IMG/VR virus record: IMGVR_UViG_3300041411_000178
Location: 124,001-188,000 of that record
Strand: one strand, 5' to 3'
Length of the DNA: 64,000 nucleotides
Below are positions 21,519-26,342 of this stretch, piece by piece; within the stretch, counting starts at the first letter, position 1, and each line of letters starts with the position of its first letter. The notes beneath the pieces were generated by a model. It saw nothing but the letters and a program-made list of their open reading frames with translations. It had not been told where the DNA came from and ran no database searches. The position numbers were made by a program, and so were the translations under genes.

Positions 21519-23984
21519 ATGCTACTTAAATTAATTCTAGAGAACTATGTTCCGCTCTTGAGTAGCAATATTCATAAAGTGGAACTTGATACCGAACATA
21601 TGATCAACCTCTTCATCTCCCTGAACGGTGTAGGTAAGAGTTCGATCCTCAAGGAAATGAATCCACTTCCTCCAGAAAACGGCAACTACAAAAACGGCCG
21701 TAAGTATGTGCAGTGGCGAGTGGGTAGCAAAGTGTACACCATGGACTCGTATACCGGTATTGGTAACGGCCACAGTTTCAAGATCAACGACGGGGACGAA
21801 CTCAACACCAACGGTACGTTCAGCGTACAGAAAGAGTTGTGTGACACTCACTTCGGTTTGGACAACGGGTTGGTTAAAGTCATCAGCGGTATTCGTATTG
21901 CAGATCGACTGTCGGCTATGTCTGCTACACGTCGTAAAGATGTGTTGATGCAGATCTACCCGAACAACACCGATTACGCGTTGGGTGTGTACGGTCGTTT
22001 GAAAACTGCTCGCAATGAATTGAAGGCAGCGATCAAGAACCAGATCGGTCGTTACACCGAAGAGAACCGTAAACTCTCTTACATCAACGAGTGTGGTGTA
22101 GAAGAGTTGGAGCGTCGGGTTAAAGGCGTTGAGGAGGAACTGAAACAGTCGCTCCTACTGCGGGGTAGTCTGGAGTCGGTTAAACTCGATCCGCGCGTGC
22201 AGGCGAAGAAGCTGGAACTTGATCAGCTTTTGGATCAGCTGCTTGCGAATAAGCTCAGTGGCGTGTGGCAGAGCAAACGGGAATACATCGACACCATTGA
22301 ACAGTCTCGTCGTATTCTCGAAGGTTATCGTGATCAGGCCAATGTGTTGCAAGGTGTGATCAGCGAGCACGCGGGTATGTTGGAAGGCTTGGAAGAATTC
22401 CTCAAAGACCCCGATGCCTTCAAGATGCAAACCAAGCACGTTAAGGGAGACATTGCCGAGACATTGATCAAGCTGGAAGTAATCGAACAGGGCTTAAAGC
22501 AATACCCTATCTTTGACGACCCAGAGAGCCCGCTAGAGGGCTTGCCGCAGATCATCCCGGCACTGATGCAGTTTCTTAACCGCGTCACTCCTGCGAGCAC
22601 CAAGGAGCTTACAGGCAACCAGTACAAAGCTTACCAAGTCCGTATGGAGAAGGTGGGTGTTGAACTGAAGAGCTTTACCAATGACCTGTCCAACATGCAG
22701 CATCAATTGTCGCATTATGAGCAGGCTGAAACGGTTGAGTGTCCTGACTGTGCGCATGAGTTCAAGTTGGGGATGACCCCTCAGAAACTGGCGAACCTTA
22801 AATCCAACATTGAGTACTCGATCAAGAAGATTGAGACGTTGGAAAAGGAACGAGATGAACTCCAGGATAAATTGGACAACGACTCGGAATGGTTTGTTTC
22901 GATGAATCAGTTGTTCACCTTTGTCCGTGAGAACAGTCACGTCAGAATCCTGCCTGAGCTGATCAAGCAGTTCGAAGTGGGTCGTTGGGCTACTCACCGT
23001 CTCCAGAACGCTTTGGAGCTCGTAGCACGCAAGTGGGAACTCCAGGGCTACCGTGACACCCTGGCAGAAGAAGAAAAGCTCCTGGATGCACGTATCGCGC
23101 TCCTGGACCGTAATAAGGTGTTGGACGTGGCTATCTACGTTAGCACCACTGAAAAAGAGCTCGTGGAGGTTAACAACAAGATCCTCTTTTACCGAGCCAA
23201 AATTGACGCCCTCAGTAATACCTTGCGGGGCATTCAAACCTATGGGGAAGACTTAAAGCGATTGGAGCAATTGCGGTTCGAGATCTTGCAAGGATTGGAG
23301 TGCGAGGGGAAGGTAAGTTTGCGGGGTGCGGTGGACCATCGCATCAGTGAATTGACCTCGGACAAAGAACACTACATGACCTCGATCATCAAGAGCAAAT
23401 CCCTGACAGCTGTCGTGCAATCCATCTCGGCTGACATCGATCGCTTGAAGCGTCGGTTGACTATCGTTGAAGTGCACATGGACGGTCTGTGCCCTAACAA
23501 GGGTTTGATCGGCAAGTTAATGAGTGACTTCATTACTGCTATCTGTGGCAACATGAATGCGGTGGTTAACAAAATCTGGAATACCCCACTGTACATCAAA
23601 CCGTGCAGCAAAGAGAACGGTGATCTGACGTATCGCTTTCCTGTGGTCAAGGGTGAGAAAGACCCTACGCCGGACGTGTCGGATTGCAGTGGCGGCGAAA
23701 CTGATATTTTAGATTGGGCATTTCGCTTTGTGTTACTGGGGTACCTCAAGTTTCCACTTCCTTTGATTATGGATGAAGTGGGCCCATTCCTGGATGAAAT
23801 CAAACGCGGTAGGTTCTTTAACTTTGTGGAGGAATACACACAGAGCAACGATGCCCGCCAACTGTTCTTGGTGTCCCATTACTTCAATCAACTCGGGGTC
23901 TTCAGAGATCCTAACATTATCGCCTTGCGTTACGAAGGCCTTACCCTGCCGGGCGAGGTTAACCAGCACTCAATAGTAATTTAA
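21519..23984 (+). CDS. sbcC: SbcC/Rad50-like SMC ATPase
   Basis: Walker A NGVGKSS, long coiled coil with central CPDC zinc hook, signature CSGGE, Walker B LIMDE, H-loop VSH. Start moved to ATG 21519 (MLLKLILENY). Confidence 0.9.
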   Translation: MLLKLILENYVPLLSSNIHKVELDTEHMINLFISLNGVGKSSILKEMNPLPPENGNYKNGRKYVQWRVGSKVYTMDSYTGIGNGHSFKINDGDELNTNGTFSVQKELCDTHFGLDNGLVKVISGIRIADRLSAMSATRRKDVLMQIYPNNTDYALGVYGRLKTARNELKAAIKNQIGRYTEENRKLSYINECGVEELERRVKGVEEELKQSLLLRGSLESVKLDPRVQAKKLELDQLLDQLLANKLSGVWQSKREYIDTIEQSRRILEGYRDQANVLQGVISEHAGMLEGLEEFLKDPDAFKMQTKHVKGDIAETLIKLEVIEQGLKQYPIFDDPESPLEGLPQIIPALMQFLNRVTPASTKELTGNQYKAYQVRMEKVGVELKSFTNDLSNMQHQLSHYEQAETVECPDCAHEFKLGMTPQKLANLKSNIEYSIKKIETLEKERDELQDKLDNDSEWFVSMNQLFTFVRENSHVRILPELIKQFEVGRWATHRLQNALELVARKWELQGYRDTLAEEEKLLDARIALLDRNKVLDVAIYVSTTEKELVEVNNKILFYRAKIDALSNTLRGIQTYGEDLKRLEQLRFEILQGLECEGKVSLRGAVDHRISELTSDKEHYMTSIIKSKSLTAVVQSISADIDRLKRRLTIVEVHMDGLCPNKGLIGKLMSDFITAICGNMNAVVNKIWNTPLYIKPCSKENGDLTYRFPVVKGEKDPTPDVSDCSGGETDILDWAFRFVLLGYLKFPLPLIMDEVGPFLDEIKRGRFFNFVEEYTQSNDARQLFLVSHYFNQLGVFRDPNIIALRYEGLTLPGEVNQHSIVI

Positions 23985-23995
23985 ACCTATATTAC
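23981..23995 (+). promoter_or_regulatory. Phage early-type promoter motif (copy 1)
   Basis: TTAAACCTATATTAC; contains TATATTAC, the reported phiKZ early promoter core. Confidence 0.7.
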
Positions 23996-24093
23996 TAAGT
24001 GGTAGAGATAACGACTTGTTATCTCTTTTAGTTGTATTCGTACTGCAAGGTCCTGTTTATGACAGCCTATTACTTCTGGAAGAGATAACGATC

Positions 24094-24375
24094 ATGCAAA
24101 GCGCACAGATCCCAATTGTACAAAACCTCGACGGTTCCTACACACCCAGCGATCAAGGCATGGGTTTTGCGGTAGTGACCTACAACTACGACATCAGCGG
24201 CAAGACTGCTATCATCAACTTCGCCGGTGTCAACCAGGCGGTCGTCACGTTCGATGAAACCGGCACCATGGTGGTGTCCTACCACATGCTGAACATGATG
24301 GCGTCGGCACAAGACATGGCATCGGTGGAAAACATCTCCCGGTACCTGGCAACCGCTTCTGCTACTCTGCACTGA
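24094..24375 (+). CDS. Hypothetical protein (93 aa)
   Basis: ATG 24094 after AGAGA; strongly biased codons. Confidence 0.65.
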   Translation: MQSAQIPIVQNLDGSYTPSDQGMGFAVVTYNYDISGKTAIINFAGVNQAVVTFDETGTMVVSYHMLNMMASAQDMASVENISRYLATASATLH

Positions 24376-24382
24376 GTTCCTT

Positions 24383-24853
24383 ATGAATGTATTGAGGTTC
24401 TTCAGTGCGAACCCTGATCAGTTCACGGAACCTTTTGAACCAGTAGTGGCGCGCTTTGCGTTGGCTGGGCAAAAGGTTCTGGTAGAATTGGGGCTCGTTA
24501 AGGATAACGACAGGCTGTACTTCTCGATCGGGAAACGATTGACCAGCGATGGACCGCTAATAATTCTGGACCGGGTGCCTGTGTCATCCGTGTCACAACA
24601 GACGTTTACGGCTCGCCCTGAACGCTGGAATGAAAGTAAGTTGTACGGGCGTGAGTTCTTGCGACATGCCTTTGAACACTTTATTTTGAATTCGCCATTC
24701 TCTGGCTTTATAAGAAAAAATGTGAATCCACTGGATATCACGCTGTTGTTTGCCAACCTAAGGAACATCAGTTCCGACTTAATCAACTTTCAATTGGGTA
24801 TAGGTCATGAAAAAGGACGACGTGATTGTACAGTACAAAGCGTTGGTTCGTGA
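24383..24853 (+). CDS. Hypothetical protein
   Basis: 156-aa ORF filling the gap in a co-oriented operon. Confidence 0.5.
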   Translation: MNVLRFFSANPDQFTEPFEPVVARFALAGQKVLVELGLVKDNDRLYFSIGKRLTSDGPLIILDRVPVSSVSQQTFTARPERWNESKLYGREFLRHAFEHFILNSPFSGFIRKNVNPLDITLLFANLRNISSDLINFQLGIGHEKGRRDCTVQSVGS

Positions 24854-25244
24854 GCTTGGAGAGAACGCCCACAACGTAGTACTGAGCGCAGGGGCTGCCG
24901 CTGTCATGATGGGCATCCGTGAAGAAACAAATGATTTAGATGTAGACGTGCTGTCCGGTGTATTCAAGTGGGCGGCTACGACCAAAACAGTTTTGAAAGA
25001 AGAAGGGGTCAGCGATCGGGTGCTTTACGCCGAAAGTATTGATCTGCACGTACTGGACGAAGATCGGGGAAGGGTCTGCGTCGAGGGTGTGTGGATCTAT
25101 AGTCCTCGTGAATTGATCCTGCAAAAACGTGCAATGTCCAAGTTCCCTGGTCGTCCTATCGGCAAGTTGGTCCAAGACCAGGTCGAGATCGCCCAGCTGG
25201 AAGCCATGGGAAACTCAACGAAATTCACTGCTAAAGTTGTCTAG
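24807..25244 (+). CDS. Small Pol-beta-superfamily nucleotidyltransferase-fold protein A
   Basis: VVLSAGAAAVMMGIREETNDLDVDV (G-x..hDhD) and C-terminal LILQKR. Confidence 0.65.
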   Translation: MKKDDVIVQYKALVRELGENAHNVVLSAGAAAVMMGIREETNDLDVDVLSGVFKWAATTKTVLKEEGVSDRVLYAESIDLHVLDEDRGRVCVEGVWIYSPRELILQKRAMSKFPGRPIGKLVQDQVEIAQLEAMGNSTKFTAKVV

Positions 25245-25253
25245 GGAAACACC

Positions 25254-25718
25254 ATGTTTAAACTTGAAGTAGAAGTCTGGCAGGAATCGGAAAATCGCAT
25301 CCTGAAACAACTGGCCGCTCTGAACAGTCTAGGAGTTCCCGCAGATCAAATGTGCGTGGGCGGTAGTTCTGCAATGGTACTGATGCAACTGCGTAACGAC
25401 GCCGGTGATCTGAATGTCTGGGTAGACTCGCCGTATTTCGAGCGTCTGGCCGAAGATTACCAGGTTCTGGTACACCCACTGCGCGATTCAGTGGTTCGTA
25501 TCCCTGACACCAACCTGTGTGTCCGTCGTCGTAACCGTTATTTCAAGAGTCATGCCTTGGAGAACGGCGTGGAAGTGTTCGATGAACTGACGCTCCTGTT
25601 GCAGAAGCGCACCAGCTACATCGATCCAGAAAGACCCATGGCTCAGCGTAAGGATGACTTCCTCGACATCCGCATCCTGAACAACCGGTTGGCCGAACGT
25701 AACAAAGTTGCATCCTGA
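25254..25718 (+). CDS. Small nucleotidyltransferase-fold protein B, paralogue of A
   Basis: MCVGGSSAMVLMQLRNDAGDLNVWV (DxN) and LLLQKR..RKDDFLDIRIL. Confidence 0.6.
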   Translation: MFKLEVEVWQESENRILKQLAALNSLGVPADQMCVGGSSAMVLMQLRNDAGDLNVWVDSPYFERLAEDYQVLVHPLRDSVVRIPDTNLCVRRRNRYFKSHALENGVEVFDELTLLLQKRTSYIDPERPMAQRKDDFLDIRILNNRLAERNKVAS

Positions 25719-25720
25719 CT

Positions 25721-25757
25721 GATTAGGCATTGGTGGGTAACTCCCCAGTGCCTAGTC
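25721..25757 (+). terminator. Terminator-like hairpin
   Basis: GATTAGGCATTGG..CCAGTGCCTAGTC after the stop codon. Confidence 0.55.
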
Positions 25758-25791
25758 TTATAGCGCATTTTGATTTTTAAGGATTACAAAT

Positions 25792-26046
25792 ATGTGGGTT
25801 ATTTGGACTGTCTTGGGCTGCATTGCCATCGTCATTGTGAATAACTGGACGTTCATCAACGTTATGATTCATCGTTACCGGTTCCCTGACTTGGGTCCTC
25901 AGGCAACGGTAGACAAGTTGTTAAAAGAAGTCAACGGCTATTTAGCCAGTGACGACGACCTTGTTTATTGCCGTGACTGCGACGGTAAAGTGCCAGGAAC
26001 GAAGGCTGCCATGATCACAGCGATTGTCAAACAAGAAGGATTATAA
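25792..26046 (+). CDS. Small membrane protein
   Basis: N-terminal hydrophobic helix; CRDC motif; AAGGA RBS. Confidence 0.6.
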   Translation: MWVIWTVLGCIAIVIVNNWTFINVMIHRYRFPDLGPQATVDKLLKEVNGYLASDDDLVYCRDCDGKVPGTKAAMITAIVKQEGL

Positions 26047-26048
26047 AC

Positions 26049-26342
26049 ATGCCAGAAATTGTGGCCATGCTTCTGGGCTTAGGTTGCTTTTTCTTTTTCC
26101 TTGAGATGACAACAGGTCCGTGGAAGTGGCTGGATCGTTTAACCGGTTGGGATGATCATCCTGACGAGAAAGAAATCAACGCGATCTGCTTGCGCCTATT
26201 ACTGGAGCAAGAGGATCTTAGTATCAACATTCAGAACCGTGTCGTCTGTAACGAATGTAAACGCGAGAGCTGTGGGTTTTGTACCAACGGCCGTGTTATT
26301 CGTCAGGCACAGGAACTGCTCGATAAGAGGAGCGAGTTATGA
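26049..26342 (+). CDS. Small membrane-anchored Cys-rich protein
   Basis: N-terminal TM, C-terminal CNEC..CGFC putative Zn site. Confidence 0.6.
   Translation: MPEIVAMLLGLGCFFFFLEMTTGPWKWLDRLTGWDDHPDEKEINAICLRLLLEQEDLSINIQNRVVCNECKRESCGFCTNGRVIRQAQELLDKRSEL

What the first reader, a model, noticed from the sequence alone, without database searches (positions are those of the whole stretch)
24807..25718. Tandem small nucleotidyltransferase-fold paralogues with complementary intact and degenerate motifs
Seen: protein A keeps the N-terminal acidic pair (AGAAA..NDLDVDV) but its C-terminal motif is altered (KR..KLVQDQVE). Protein B has DLN instead of DLD but keeps the canonical K..RKD..D. They sit downstream of an early-type promoter and end at their own hairpin. 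Known: G[GS]-x-hDhD plus a late K/KD..D motif typifies the Pol-beta-superfamily AbiEii/MenT/DUF1814-like NTases, some of which add nucleotides to tRNA 3' ends. Inference: either an enzyme plus pseudo-enzyme regulator or an obligate heterodimer, possibly repairing or modifying tRNA ends or AMPylating a host protein during takeover.
Basis: partly seen in the sequence, partly recalled or inferred. Interest (0 to 1): 0.68.

Follow-up and report, generated by a model that had tools for sequence, protein, structure and literature searches.

The report
Phage nucleotidyltransferase with inactive twin
Two adjacent small genes of an uncultured giant (EL-like) phage encode related proteins of the nucleotidyltransferase fold, one with a complete catalytic motif set and one that has lost the metal-binding residues; the family is uncharacterised and what it modifies is unknown.

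Summary
The two ORFs are real: A at 24807-25244 (145 aa) and B at 25254-25718 (154 aa). They are paralogues (28% identity, E 4e-9; both hit phrog_12854). The window comes from a 224-kb uncultured relative of Pseudomonas jumbo phage EL, where the orthologues are gp120 and gp121.

AlphaFold models of both proteins (pLDDT 88.6 and 95.9) match one subgroup of Pol-beta-superfamily nucleotidyltransferases at Z 8-10.7: TM1012, MenT1/MenT3, LnuA, ANT(2'')-Ia and JHP933. Other folds score about 5 or less. No Pfam, NCBIfam or PDB sequence match exists.

A carries every residue of the family consensus, including the C-terminal K107, R116, K120, D124 and E127. B alone is degenerate: D45 to N54, D47 to W56, H81 to C89, and the acidic 84-85 pair to R92/R93.

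B-type proteins form one well-supported clade under purifying selection. In 12 distinct loci they always sit just downstream of an A-type gene. A-type genes often occur alone.

My best reading is an active minimal DUF1814-like transferase plus a pseudo-enzyme partner, expressed from an early-type operon. Physical interaction and the substrate are untested. Some related phages carry A-like genes without the aspartates, which leaves open a non-catalytic role.

The parts
23983..23995 (+). EL/phiKZ-type promoter-like motif (AAACCTATATTAC) at the head of the operon
   Evidence: It matches the EL annotated promoter and the published EL/phiKZ consensus. It occurs 8 times in the window against 2.7 expected. 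Timing is not measured.
24095..24375 (+). EL gp119-like small ORF, first gene of the operon. The likely start is the ATG at 24095; the mechanical ORF starts at 24016.
   Evidence: It hits phrog_16812. Homologues lie at the same position in all related loci, aligning from about residue 27.
24383..24853 (+). ORF X, 156 aa, unknown function. It overlaps the start of A by 47 nt.
   Evidence: It is conserved in L004-L008, L019, L022 and L023. dN/dS is 0.13-0.31. It has no Pfam or PHROG hit and is absent from EL.
24807..25244 (+). Protein A, 145 aa: minimal nucleotidyltransferase-fold protein with the full motif set (G29, R38, T41, D43, D45, D47, H81, K107, R116, K120, D124, E127). Orthologue of EL gp120.
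25254..25718 (+). Protein B, 154 aa: paralogue with the same fold. N54 and W56 replace the aspartates and R91-R93/N94 replace the acidic strand. C-terminal K118, R127, D135 and D138 are kept. Orthologue of EL gp121.
25721..25757 (+). GC-rich hairpin right after the stop codon of B, the likely operon end
   Evidence: z -3.5. The structure is conserved with changed sequence in related loci. It was not called as a canonical terminator.

Best explanation
A and B are an ancient tandem duplicate of a small, jumbo-phage-specific family of Pol-beta-superfamily nucleotidyltransferases, closest in shape and motif order to the MenT/AbiEii (DUF1814) and ANT(2'')/Lnu group.

A is the catalytic protein. It binds an NTP with Mg2+ through D43/D45/D47, with K107, R116, K120, D124 and E127 from the C-terminal helices, and it transfers the NMP to a hydroxyl of an acceptor that is still unknown.

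B cannot do this chemistry. It has kept the fold and the C-terminal nucleotide- or substrate-facing residues, while its former metal site has become basic and aromatic (N54, W56, R91, R93, N94, Y96, F97). B therefore most likely acts as a non-catalytic partner of A, either regulating it or binding substrate.

Both genes are co-transcribed in an operon headed by an early-type promoter and closed by a hairpin, inside the DNA-metabolism block between the Rad50/SMC-like ATPase and the NAD-dependent ligase.

Shown: paralogy, fold, motif status, conservation, gene order. Inferred: A is active, B is inactive, and they work together. Unknown: the acceptor.
For: Paralogy. Fold: models with pLDDT 88.6 and 95.9. 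Top structural matches, Z 8-10.7, are all TM1012, MenT1/3, LnuA, ANT(2'')-Ia, 5uvd, JHP933 or AbiEi. In an unbiased scan of 48,161 chains only 8 reach Z >= 8, all from this group, and the next tier is about Z 5.

Motifs: A matches the consensus of 93 representatives at every conserved position. In B the two aspartates are N and W in all 18 close homologues and in all 11 B-type representatives. In AbiEii even D-to-E changes at these positions abolish function (PMC3985639).

B is not decaying. Its dN/dS is 0.13-0.44, and it has its own conserved signature and forms one clade with SH-aLRT 99.

Dependence of B on A: in 12 distinct loci every B-type gene lies directly downstream of an A-type gene, usually 0-37 nt away. 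A-type genes stand alone in RP12, L015 and L016.

Operon signals.
Against: No activity or binding data exist. The complex prediction gave no verdict.

In the same syntenic slot, three related phages carry A-like proteins whose D43/D45/D47 are M-N-S, M-V-I or K-T-N. Two of these phages lack B. Catalysis by the slot's protein is therefore dispensable in some lineages.

The third metal ligand of A is unclear: H81 is conserved, while D84/E85 are acidic in only about half of the family.

There is no sequence-level link to any characterised family.

Both proteins are mildly acidic, pI 5.4-5.7, which is not what one expects of a tRNA-binding enzyme.
Confidence: 0.5

Rival explanations
1. Neither protein acts mainly as an enzyme. 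The fold is used as a binding module, for example to sequester a nucleotide-type signal, to mimic an antitoxin-like partner of host DUF1814 (AbiE/MenT-type) toxins, or to bind a nucleic-acid end. The intact aspartates of A would then be ancestral residue.
For: A-like orthologues without the aspartate triad persist in the same slot in L021-L023, and 5 of 11 representatives of the EL-type A clade are 'odd' at the triad. B is conserved with a basic/aromatic cleft. The catalytically inert C-terminal domains of the antitoxins AbiEi (6y8q) and Rv2827c (1zel) are fold neighbours of A and B, at Z 8.2-8.7 and 6.2-6.8.
Against: D45 and D47 are invariant in all 20 close A homologues and in every A that is paired with a B, except L023. 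D43 and D45 are kept in 84 and 75 of 93 family representatives. This pattern argues for selection on catalysis in most lineages.
Confidence: 0.2
2. A is a small-molecule nucleotidyltransferase of the ANT(2'')/Lnu kind. It would inactivate or modify a metabolite, antibiotic-like compound or signalling molecule, with B as an accessory binding protein.
For: ANT(2'')-Ia and LnuA are among the best fold matches and are of similar size (Z 9.2-9.7). One family member (P0137) is fused to a GNAT acetyltransferase, as in bifunctional drug-modifying enzymes. The proteins are acidic.
Against: No HMM match to the ANT(2'') family was found beyond one chance-level hit among 93 members. Fold scores do not separate ANT/Lnu from MenT. 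No small-molecule pathway genes lie nearby.
Confidence: 0.15
3. A is an end-processing polymerase for DNA or RNA repair. It would work with the neighbouring Rad50/SMC-like ATPase, NAD-dependent ligase, RNase H and DHH phosphoesterase, in the way RlaP NTases accompany RNA ligases.
For: The block order SMC_N-like ATPase, small ORF, A, B, LigA, unknown ORF, RNase H, DHH is conserved in all EL-like loci. Family members in Ralstonia phages lie near DnaB, and in RVTF4 next to DHFR and RNR. The RlaP precedent is described in PMC7824862.
Against: No single neighbour is shared across the wider family. There is no hit to the RlaP model or to Pol X domains. AsfvPolX matches only the 74-81-residue palm, at Z 6-6.8. 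Gene blocks in jumbo phages mix unrelated functions.
Confidence: 0.12

Closest known systems
MenT1/MenT3/AbiEii (DUF1814, PF08843) nucleotidyltransferase toxins
   Same: They share the same NTase subgroup by fold (Z 9-10, 130-145 residues aligned). The motif order is the same: G-[GSA], R, [ST]-x-D-x-D, later K...R, then an acidic D..D/E. In MenT1 the corresponding residues are T39, D41, D43, K137 and D152. The AbiEii motifs I-IV are given.
   Different: There is no HMM match to PF08843. The phage proteins are much smaller, 145-154 aa against 185-290. They are phage-encoded and have no AbiEi/MenA-type antitoxin gene; the partner is a paralogue instead. The spacing from G to the aspartates is 12-14 residues rather than 15. 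The substrate is unknown.
TM1012 (2ewr/2fcl) putative nucleotidyltransferase
   Same: It is the best structural match to both A and B (Z 10.3-10.7, 124-128 residues) and is the same size, 156 aa.
   Different: Identity is 10-13%, there is no sequence-level link, and its function is unknown, so it adds no mechanism.
ANT(2'')-Ia and LnuA antibiotic adenylyltransferases
   Same: They have the same compact two-lobed NTase architecture and size (Z 9.2-9.7).
   Different: There is no family HMM match, the context is a phage rather than a resistance gene, and there is no evidence for a drug substrate.
Active-plus-inactive NTase pairs: giant-virus poly(A) polymerases (4p37/4wse) and the AbiEi antitoxin C-terminal domain
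   Same: Both regions of the Megavirus/Mimivirus enzyme (about residues 49-211 and 223-422) and the AbiEi C-terminal domain align to A or B. They illustrate inert NTase-fold modules that accompany an active one.
   Different: Those are fusions or unrelated-sequence partners. Here the two modules are separate, tandemly encoded paralogues. That the second viral domain is inactive comes from my own knowledge and was not tested here.
phrog_12854 / EL gp120-gp121
   Same: These are direct homologues: 50% and about 40% identity, with the same synteny.
   Different: None. They are annotated only as hypothetical proteins.

Membership tests
Pol-beta-superfamily nucleotidyltransferase fold | Alpha/beta NTase core plus helical C-terminal lobe | tested here: met
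   Both models match at Z 8-10.7 to about 8 non-redundant NTase-group structures, with a clear gap to the next tier.
Pol-beta-superfamily nucleotidyltransferase fold | hG[GS]...DhD metal-binding motif | tested here: met
   Met for A: G29-A30, then D43, D45 and D47, with D45 and D47 invariant. Not met for B: the GGS is kept but N54 and W56 replace the aspartates.
Pol-beta-superfamily nucleotidyltransferase fold | Third carboxylate on a neighbouring strand | tested here: inconclusive
   In A, H81 is conserved (70 of 93) while D84/E85 are acidic in only about 45% of the family.
DUF1814 / AbiEii / MenT (PF08843) | Match to the family HMM | tested here: not met
   There was no hit at E <= 1 for A or B, and none among 93 family representatives.
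DUF1814 / AbiEii / MenT (PF08843) | Motifs I-IV: hG[GS]x15DhD with Arg, K...R, +DxxD (PMC3985639) | tested here: inconclusive
   The order and residue types are present in A (G29, R38, D43/D45, K107...R116, D124..E127). The spacing is 12-14 rather than 15, and motif IV reads Q-D-x-x-E.
DUF1814 / AbiEii / MenT (PF08843) | Cognate antitoxin gene (AbiEi/COG5340 or MenA) next to the toxin | tested here: not met
   Neighbouring ORFs have no such domains. The adjacent gene is a paralogue.
DUF1814 / AbiEii / MenT (PF08843) | NMP addition to tRNA 3' ends and growth inhibition | not testable with these tools
   This needs biochemistry and toxicity assays.
DUF6036 (PF19502) | Match above the gathering score | tested here: not met
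   Only 7 of 93 members give sub-threshold hits (best E 0.0025; 18.4 bits against a cut-off of 23.6 for P0137). A and B give none.
ANT(2'')/Lnu drug nucleotidyltransferases | Family HMM match (PF10706) | tested here: not met
   One of 93 members hits at E 0.065. The similarity is in fold only.
RlaP RNA-repair NTase | Family HMM match and an adjacent RNA ligase | tested here: not met
   There is no Pfam hit. The neighbour is an NAD-dependent DNA ligase, not an RNA ligase.
phrog_12854 | HMM match | tested here: met
   A scores 1.1e-27 and B 2.4e-12.

The most novel reading that the evidence does not exclude
B, and perhaps the aspartate-less A-like proteins of related phages, is a new kind of phage counter-defence protein built on a dead NTase fold. 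It would be either a sponge for a nucleotide-based immune signal, or a mimic of AbiEi/MenA-type antitoxins that neutralises host DUF1814 abortive-infection toxins. A would be either the ancestral enzyme or a phage-borne MenT-like effector kept in check by B, making the pair a toxin-antitoxin-like paralogue pair.
Probability: 0.12. Interest if true: 0.8.

Novelty: new variant of a known kind. Interest (0 to 1): 0.45.

Why it matters
This work gives a fold and a testable catalytic hypothesis to an unannotated protein family. The family has about 460 clusters at 50% identity and, among isolated phages, is seen only in jumbo phages. It includes EL gp120 and gp121.

It also identifies a conserved enzyme/pseudo-enzyme paralogue pair in which one partner has turned its metal site into a basic, aromatic pocket. 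DUF1814-type transferases are known as bacterial toxins and abortive-infection effectors that block tRNAs. A phage-encoded miniature version expressed from an early-type promoter could reveal a host-takeover or counter-defence activity. It could also reveal a new way of regulating such enzymes.

If the pair proves to be an ordinary accessory enzyme, the gain is annotation only.

Tried and rejected
- Complex prediction of A with B gave no verdict (score 0.00, controls not run). It is not evidence for or against binding.
- Pfam, NCBIfam and PADLOC scans of A and B gave nothing usable. The Attacin_N hit and the Type I specificity-subunit hit are chance-level.
- Profile searches of PDB sequences with 25- and 93-sequence alignments found only chance hits: Rrp5, ribosomal protein L3 and PilM.
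- A megablast of the region against the phage collection found no match.
- I checked whether the longer family members (206-347 aa) are A-B fusions. Each has a single NTase domain. Of the ten scanned against Pfam, only P0137 has a recognisable extra domain, a GNAT.
- A word-indexed search with the family alignment returned only 'hypothetical protein' names and no Pfam domains.
- A literature search for DUF6036 found no paper.
- I rejected the reading in which B supplies the C-terminal motif that A lacks, because A has that motif.
- I rejected the idea that B is a decaying pseudogene, because of its dN/dS values and clade-wide signature.
- I considered D52 and D58 of B as an alternative acidic pair and rejected it, because neither is conserved.
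- Net charge is too weak to discriminate between substrates.

Full report
**What is at the coordinates**

A runs from 24807 to 25244 (145 aa) and B from 25254 to 25718 (154 aa), 9 nt apart. They are paralogues: BLASTP gives 28% identity over 125 residues with E 4e-9. Both hit the same phage protein family, phrog_12854, at 1.1e-27 and 2.4e-12. Neither hits Pfam, NCBIfam or PADLOC in a meaningful way.

**Origin of the window**

The region has no near-identical DNA in the phage collection. The proteins are 50% (A) and about 40% (B) identical to adjacent genes of Pseudomonas jumbo phage EL and its relatives. In EL these are gp120 and gp121. They lie between gp118/gp119 and the NAD-dependent DNA ligase gp122. 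The window itself is part of IMG/VR contig UViG_3300041411_000178, 224 kb.

The local gene order is as follows:
- a Rad50/SMC-like ATPase of 838 aa (weak SMC_N hit);
- a gp119-like ORF;
- an extra conserved ORF X;
- A, then B;
- two small ORFs;
- LigA, then an unknown 488-aa protein;
- RNase H;
- a DHH/DHHA1 phosphoesterase.

The same block is found in every EL-like locus I fetched.

**Fold**

I predicted A and B with alignments of 25 and 45 sequences, giving mean pLDDT 88.6 and 95.9.
- Foldseek against the PDB put nucleotidyltransferases on top for A: TM1012, ANT(2'')-Ia, LnuA, MenT1, MenT3/TglT and viral poly(A) polymerases.
- Re-alignment gave Z 8.3-10.7 for this group, for both proteins.
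- An independent scan of 48,161 representative chains with B found only eight chains at Z 8 or more. They were TM1012, MenT1, LnuA, ANT(2''), TglT, 5uvd, a Helicobacter NTase and the AbiEi antitoxin. Other folds scored about 5 or less.

The NTase fold is therefore well supported, and so is the subgroup (MenT/AbiEii, ANT(2'')/Lnu, TM1012). At sequence level there is no link to any solved structure.

**The family**

A profile of A- and B-type sequences found 464 cluster representatives at E <= 0.001 among 1.84 billion proteins. Most are 130-165 aa. None reaches a Pfam threshold. Seven of 93 give sub-threshold hits to DUF6036, which Pfam describes as a nucleotidyltransferase of unknown function. 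All source names are 'hypothetical protein'.

Among isolated phages, sequence homologues occur only in jumbo phages: EL-like phages, Ralstonia RP12/RP31/FLC, and Pseudomonas RVTF4 and D6. Fold matches among predicted viral structures add 201phi2-1, Noxifer, Phabio, PhiEaH1 and RSF1.

The family consensus, in A numbering, is G29, R38, T41, D43, D45, (D47), H81, K107, R116, K120, D124, D/E127 and L131. This order parallels the four DUF1814 motifs described for AbiEii: hG[GS]x15DhD with an Arg, a C-terminal K...R, and +DxxD (PMC3985639). It also parallels the MenT1 active-site residues T39, D41, D43, K137 and D152 (PMC10435456).

**Which protein is degenerate**

The alignments show otherwise.

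A carries the consensus residue at every conserved family position. E127 is a conservative variant. D45, D47, R116, K120 and D124 are invariant among its 20 close homologues.

B keeps GGS, R47, K118, R127, D135 and D138, but the catalytic side is replaced:
- N54 for D45;
- W56 for D47 (invariant W);
- C89 for H81 (W or Y in other B-types);
- R92/R93 for D84/E85, and N94 for D86;
- Q131 for K120.

The alternative acidic residues D52 and D58 are not conserved. In AbiEii, even D-to-E replacements at the two aspartates abolish activity. B should therefore be inactive as a canonical metal-dependent transferase.

**B is a maintained, derived lineage**

All proteins with the N/W pair, 11 of 93 representatives, fall in one clade with SH-aLRT 99 on a long stem. 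They share the signature GGG, D-x-N-x-W, [WY]-x-R-x-x-N. Pairwise dN/dS among close relatives is 0.08-0.25 for A and 0.13-0.44 for B (with dS near saturation). Both proteins are therefore under purifying selection.

**Gene arrangement**

In 12 distinct loci that contain a B-type gene, an A-type gene lies immediately upstream on the same strand. The loci are the window, L004-L009, L010, the EL group, L019, L020 and L023. The gaps are mostly 0-37 nt; one locus has a 97-nt gap and one has a 4-nt overlap. I saw no B-type gene alone. A-type genes do stand alone in RP12, L015 and L016. This asymmetry is the main argument that B works through or with A.

**Evidence that complicates the picture**

In the same syntenic slot, three related phages have A-like proteins with the aspartate positions changed to M-N-S (L021), M-V-I (L022) and K-T-N (L023). 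L021 and L022 have no B. L023 has the dead A-like gene, a fragment and a B-type gene. In the tree these odd proteins group with the EL-type A clade.

Catalysis is therefore not retained everywhere. A non-catalytic function for the whole group remains possible. The C-terminal domains of the antitoxins AbiEi and Rv2827c appear as fold neighbours (Z 8.2-8.7 and 6.2-6.8). This shows that inert modules of this shape already accompany DUF1814 toxins.

**Expression signals**

The motif AAACCTATATTAC at 23983-23995 overlaps the stop codon of the upstream ATPase gene. It matches the promoter annotated in EL before gp119, the published EL consensus and the phiKZ TATATTAC motif (PMC7058600). It also resembles the experimentally mapped early promoter consensus of phage AR9 (PMC5312081). 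The pattern is over-represented in the window: 8 matches against 2.7 expected, and none of 100 shuffles reached 8.

The motif heads a four-gene unit (gp119-like, X, A, B) rather than A and B alone. Early timing is an inference.

After B there is a strong hairpin at 25721-25757. Hairpins of different sequence sit at the same place in all related loci checked, followed by a shared T-rich motif. The hairpin has no canonical U-run.

**Mechanism I commit to (confidence about 0.5)**

- A is an active minimal DUF1814-like nucleotidyltransferase.
- B is a pseudo-enzyme paralogue that retains the fold and the C-terminal nucleotide- or substrate-facing residues, with a basic/aromatic pocket where the metal site was.
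- B acts as a regulatory or substrate-binding partner of A.
- Both are made together early in infection.
- The acceptor is unknown. An RNA 3' end (tRNA) is the leading analogy, but it is weakened by the acidic pI of both proteins and by the absence of tRNA genes or RNA-repair genes nearby.

**Rivals**

- A purely binding role: sponge, decoy or antitoxin mimic.
- A small-molecule transferase of the ANT/Lnu kind. One family member is fused to a GNAT acetyltransferase.
- A DNA or RNA end-processing role with the neighbouring ligase and nuclease-type genes, in the manner of RlaP NTases (PMC7824862).

The complex prediction for A+B returned no verdict and is not used as evidence.

**Novelty**

The fold and chemistry belong to a known superfamily. 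The family itself is uncharacterised. The tandem enzyme/pseudo-enzyme arrangement, with a remodelled pocket, has not been described for it as far as my searches show. I rate it a new variant of a known kind, of moderate interest.

Noticed in passing
window 24383-24853 (+): ORF X (156 aa) lies between the gp119-like ORF and A and overlaps the first 47 nt of A in another frame. It is conserved in a subset of EL-like phages, with the overlap kept in the closest ones (L004-L008), and has dN/dS 0.13-0.31. It is absent from EL itself and has no family hit. It may be a further member of the module.
   Followed up: partly
L021 5001-5441; L022 5001-5447; L023 4926-5459: A-like proteins in the same syntenic slot have lost all three aspartates (M-N-S, M-V-I, K-T-N). 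L021 and L022 lack a B-type gene. L023 has an extra N-terminal fragment of the family between the A-like and B genes.
   Followed up: partly
window 25758-25780 and the same position in L001, L004-L007, L010, L020, L023: A shared T-rich motif, of the type CTTTATAGCGCATTTTGATTTTT, directly follows the post-B hairpin in most related loci, although the hairpin sequences differ. It could be a terminator tail or a promoter for the ligase block.
   Followed up: no
window 24004-24026 (+): A 10-bp hairpin followed by a T-rich tail lies 8 nt downstream of the promoter-like motif. It could terminate the upstream ATPase gene or form the 5' end of the operon transcript. EL has no equivalent.
   Followed up: no
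protein P0137 (metagenomic family member): This is a fusion of the family's NTase domain with a GNAT acetyltransferase domain. It is reminiscent of bifunctional small-molecule-modifying enzymes.
   Followed up: no
fold-search hits 6y8q_A (residues 57-173) and 1zel: The C-terminal domains of the antitoxins AbiEi and Rv2827c score as NTase-fold neighbours of both A and B (Z 8.2-8.7 and 6.2-6.8). This suggests that DUF1814 antitoxins themselves contain an inert NTase-like module.
   Followed up: no
window 25792-26046 and 26049-26342 (+): Two small ORFs lie between B and the ligase. Each has a hydrophobic N-terminus and Cys-x-x-Cys motifs. The first was found only in the window's own contig among the loci fetched, and the second is conserved in L004-L007.
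   Followed up: partly
L024 3899-4636 (Pseudomonas phage RVTF4): A 245-aa family member with an extra C-terminal region sits directly after dihydrofolate reductase and near ribonucleotide reductase. In Ralstonia phages the homologue lies near DnaB. The family repeatedly lands in DNA or nucleotide metabolism neighbourhoods without a fixed partner.
   Followed up: no
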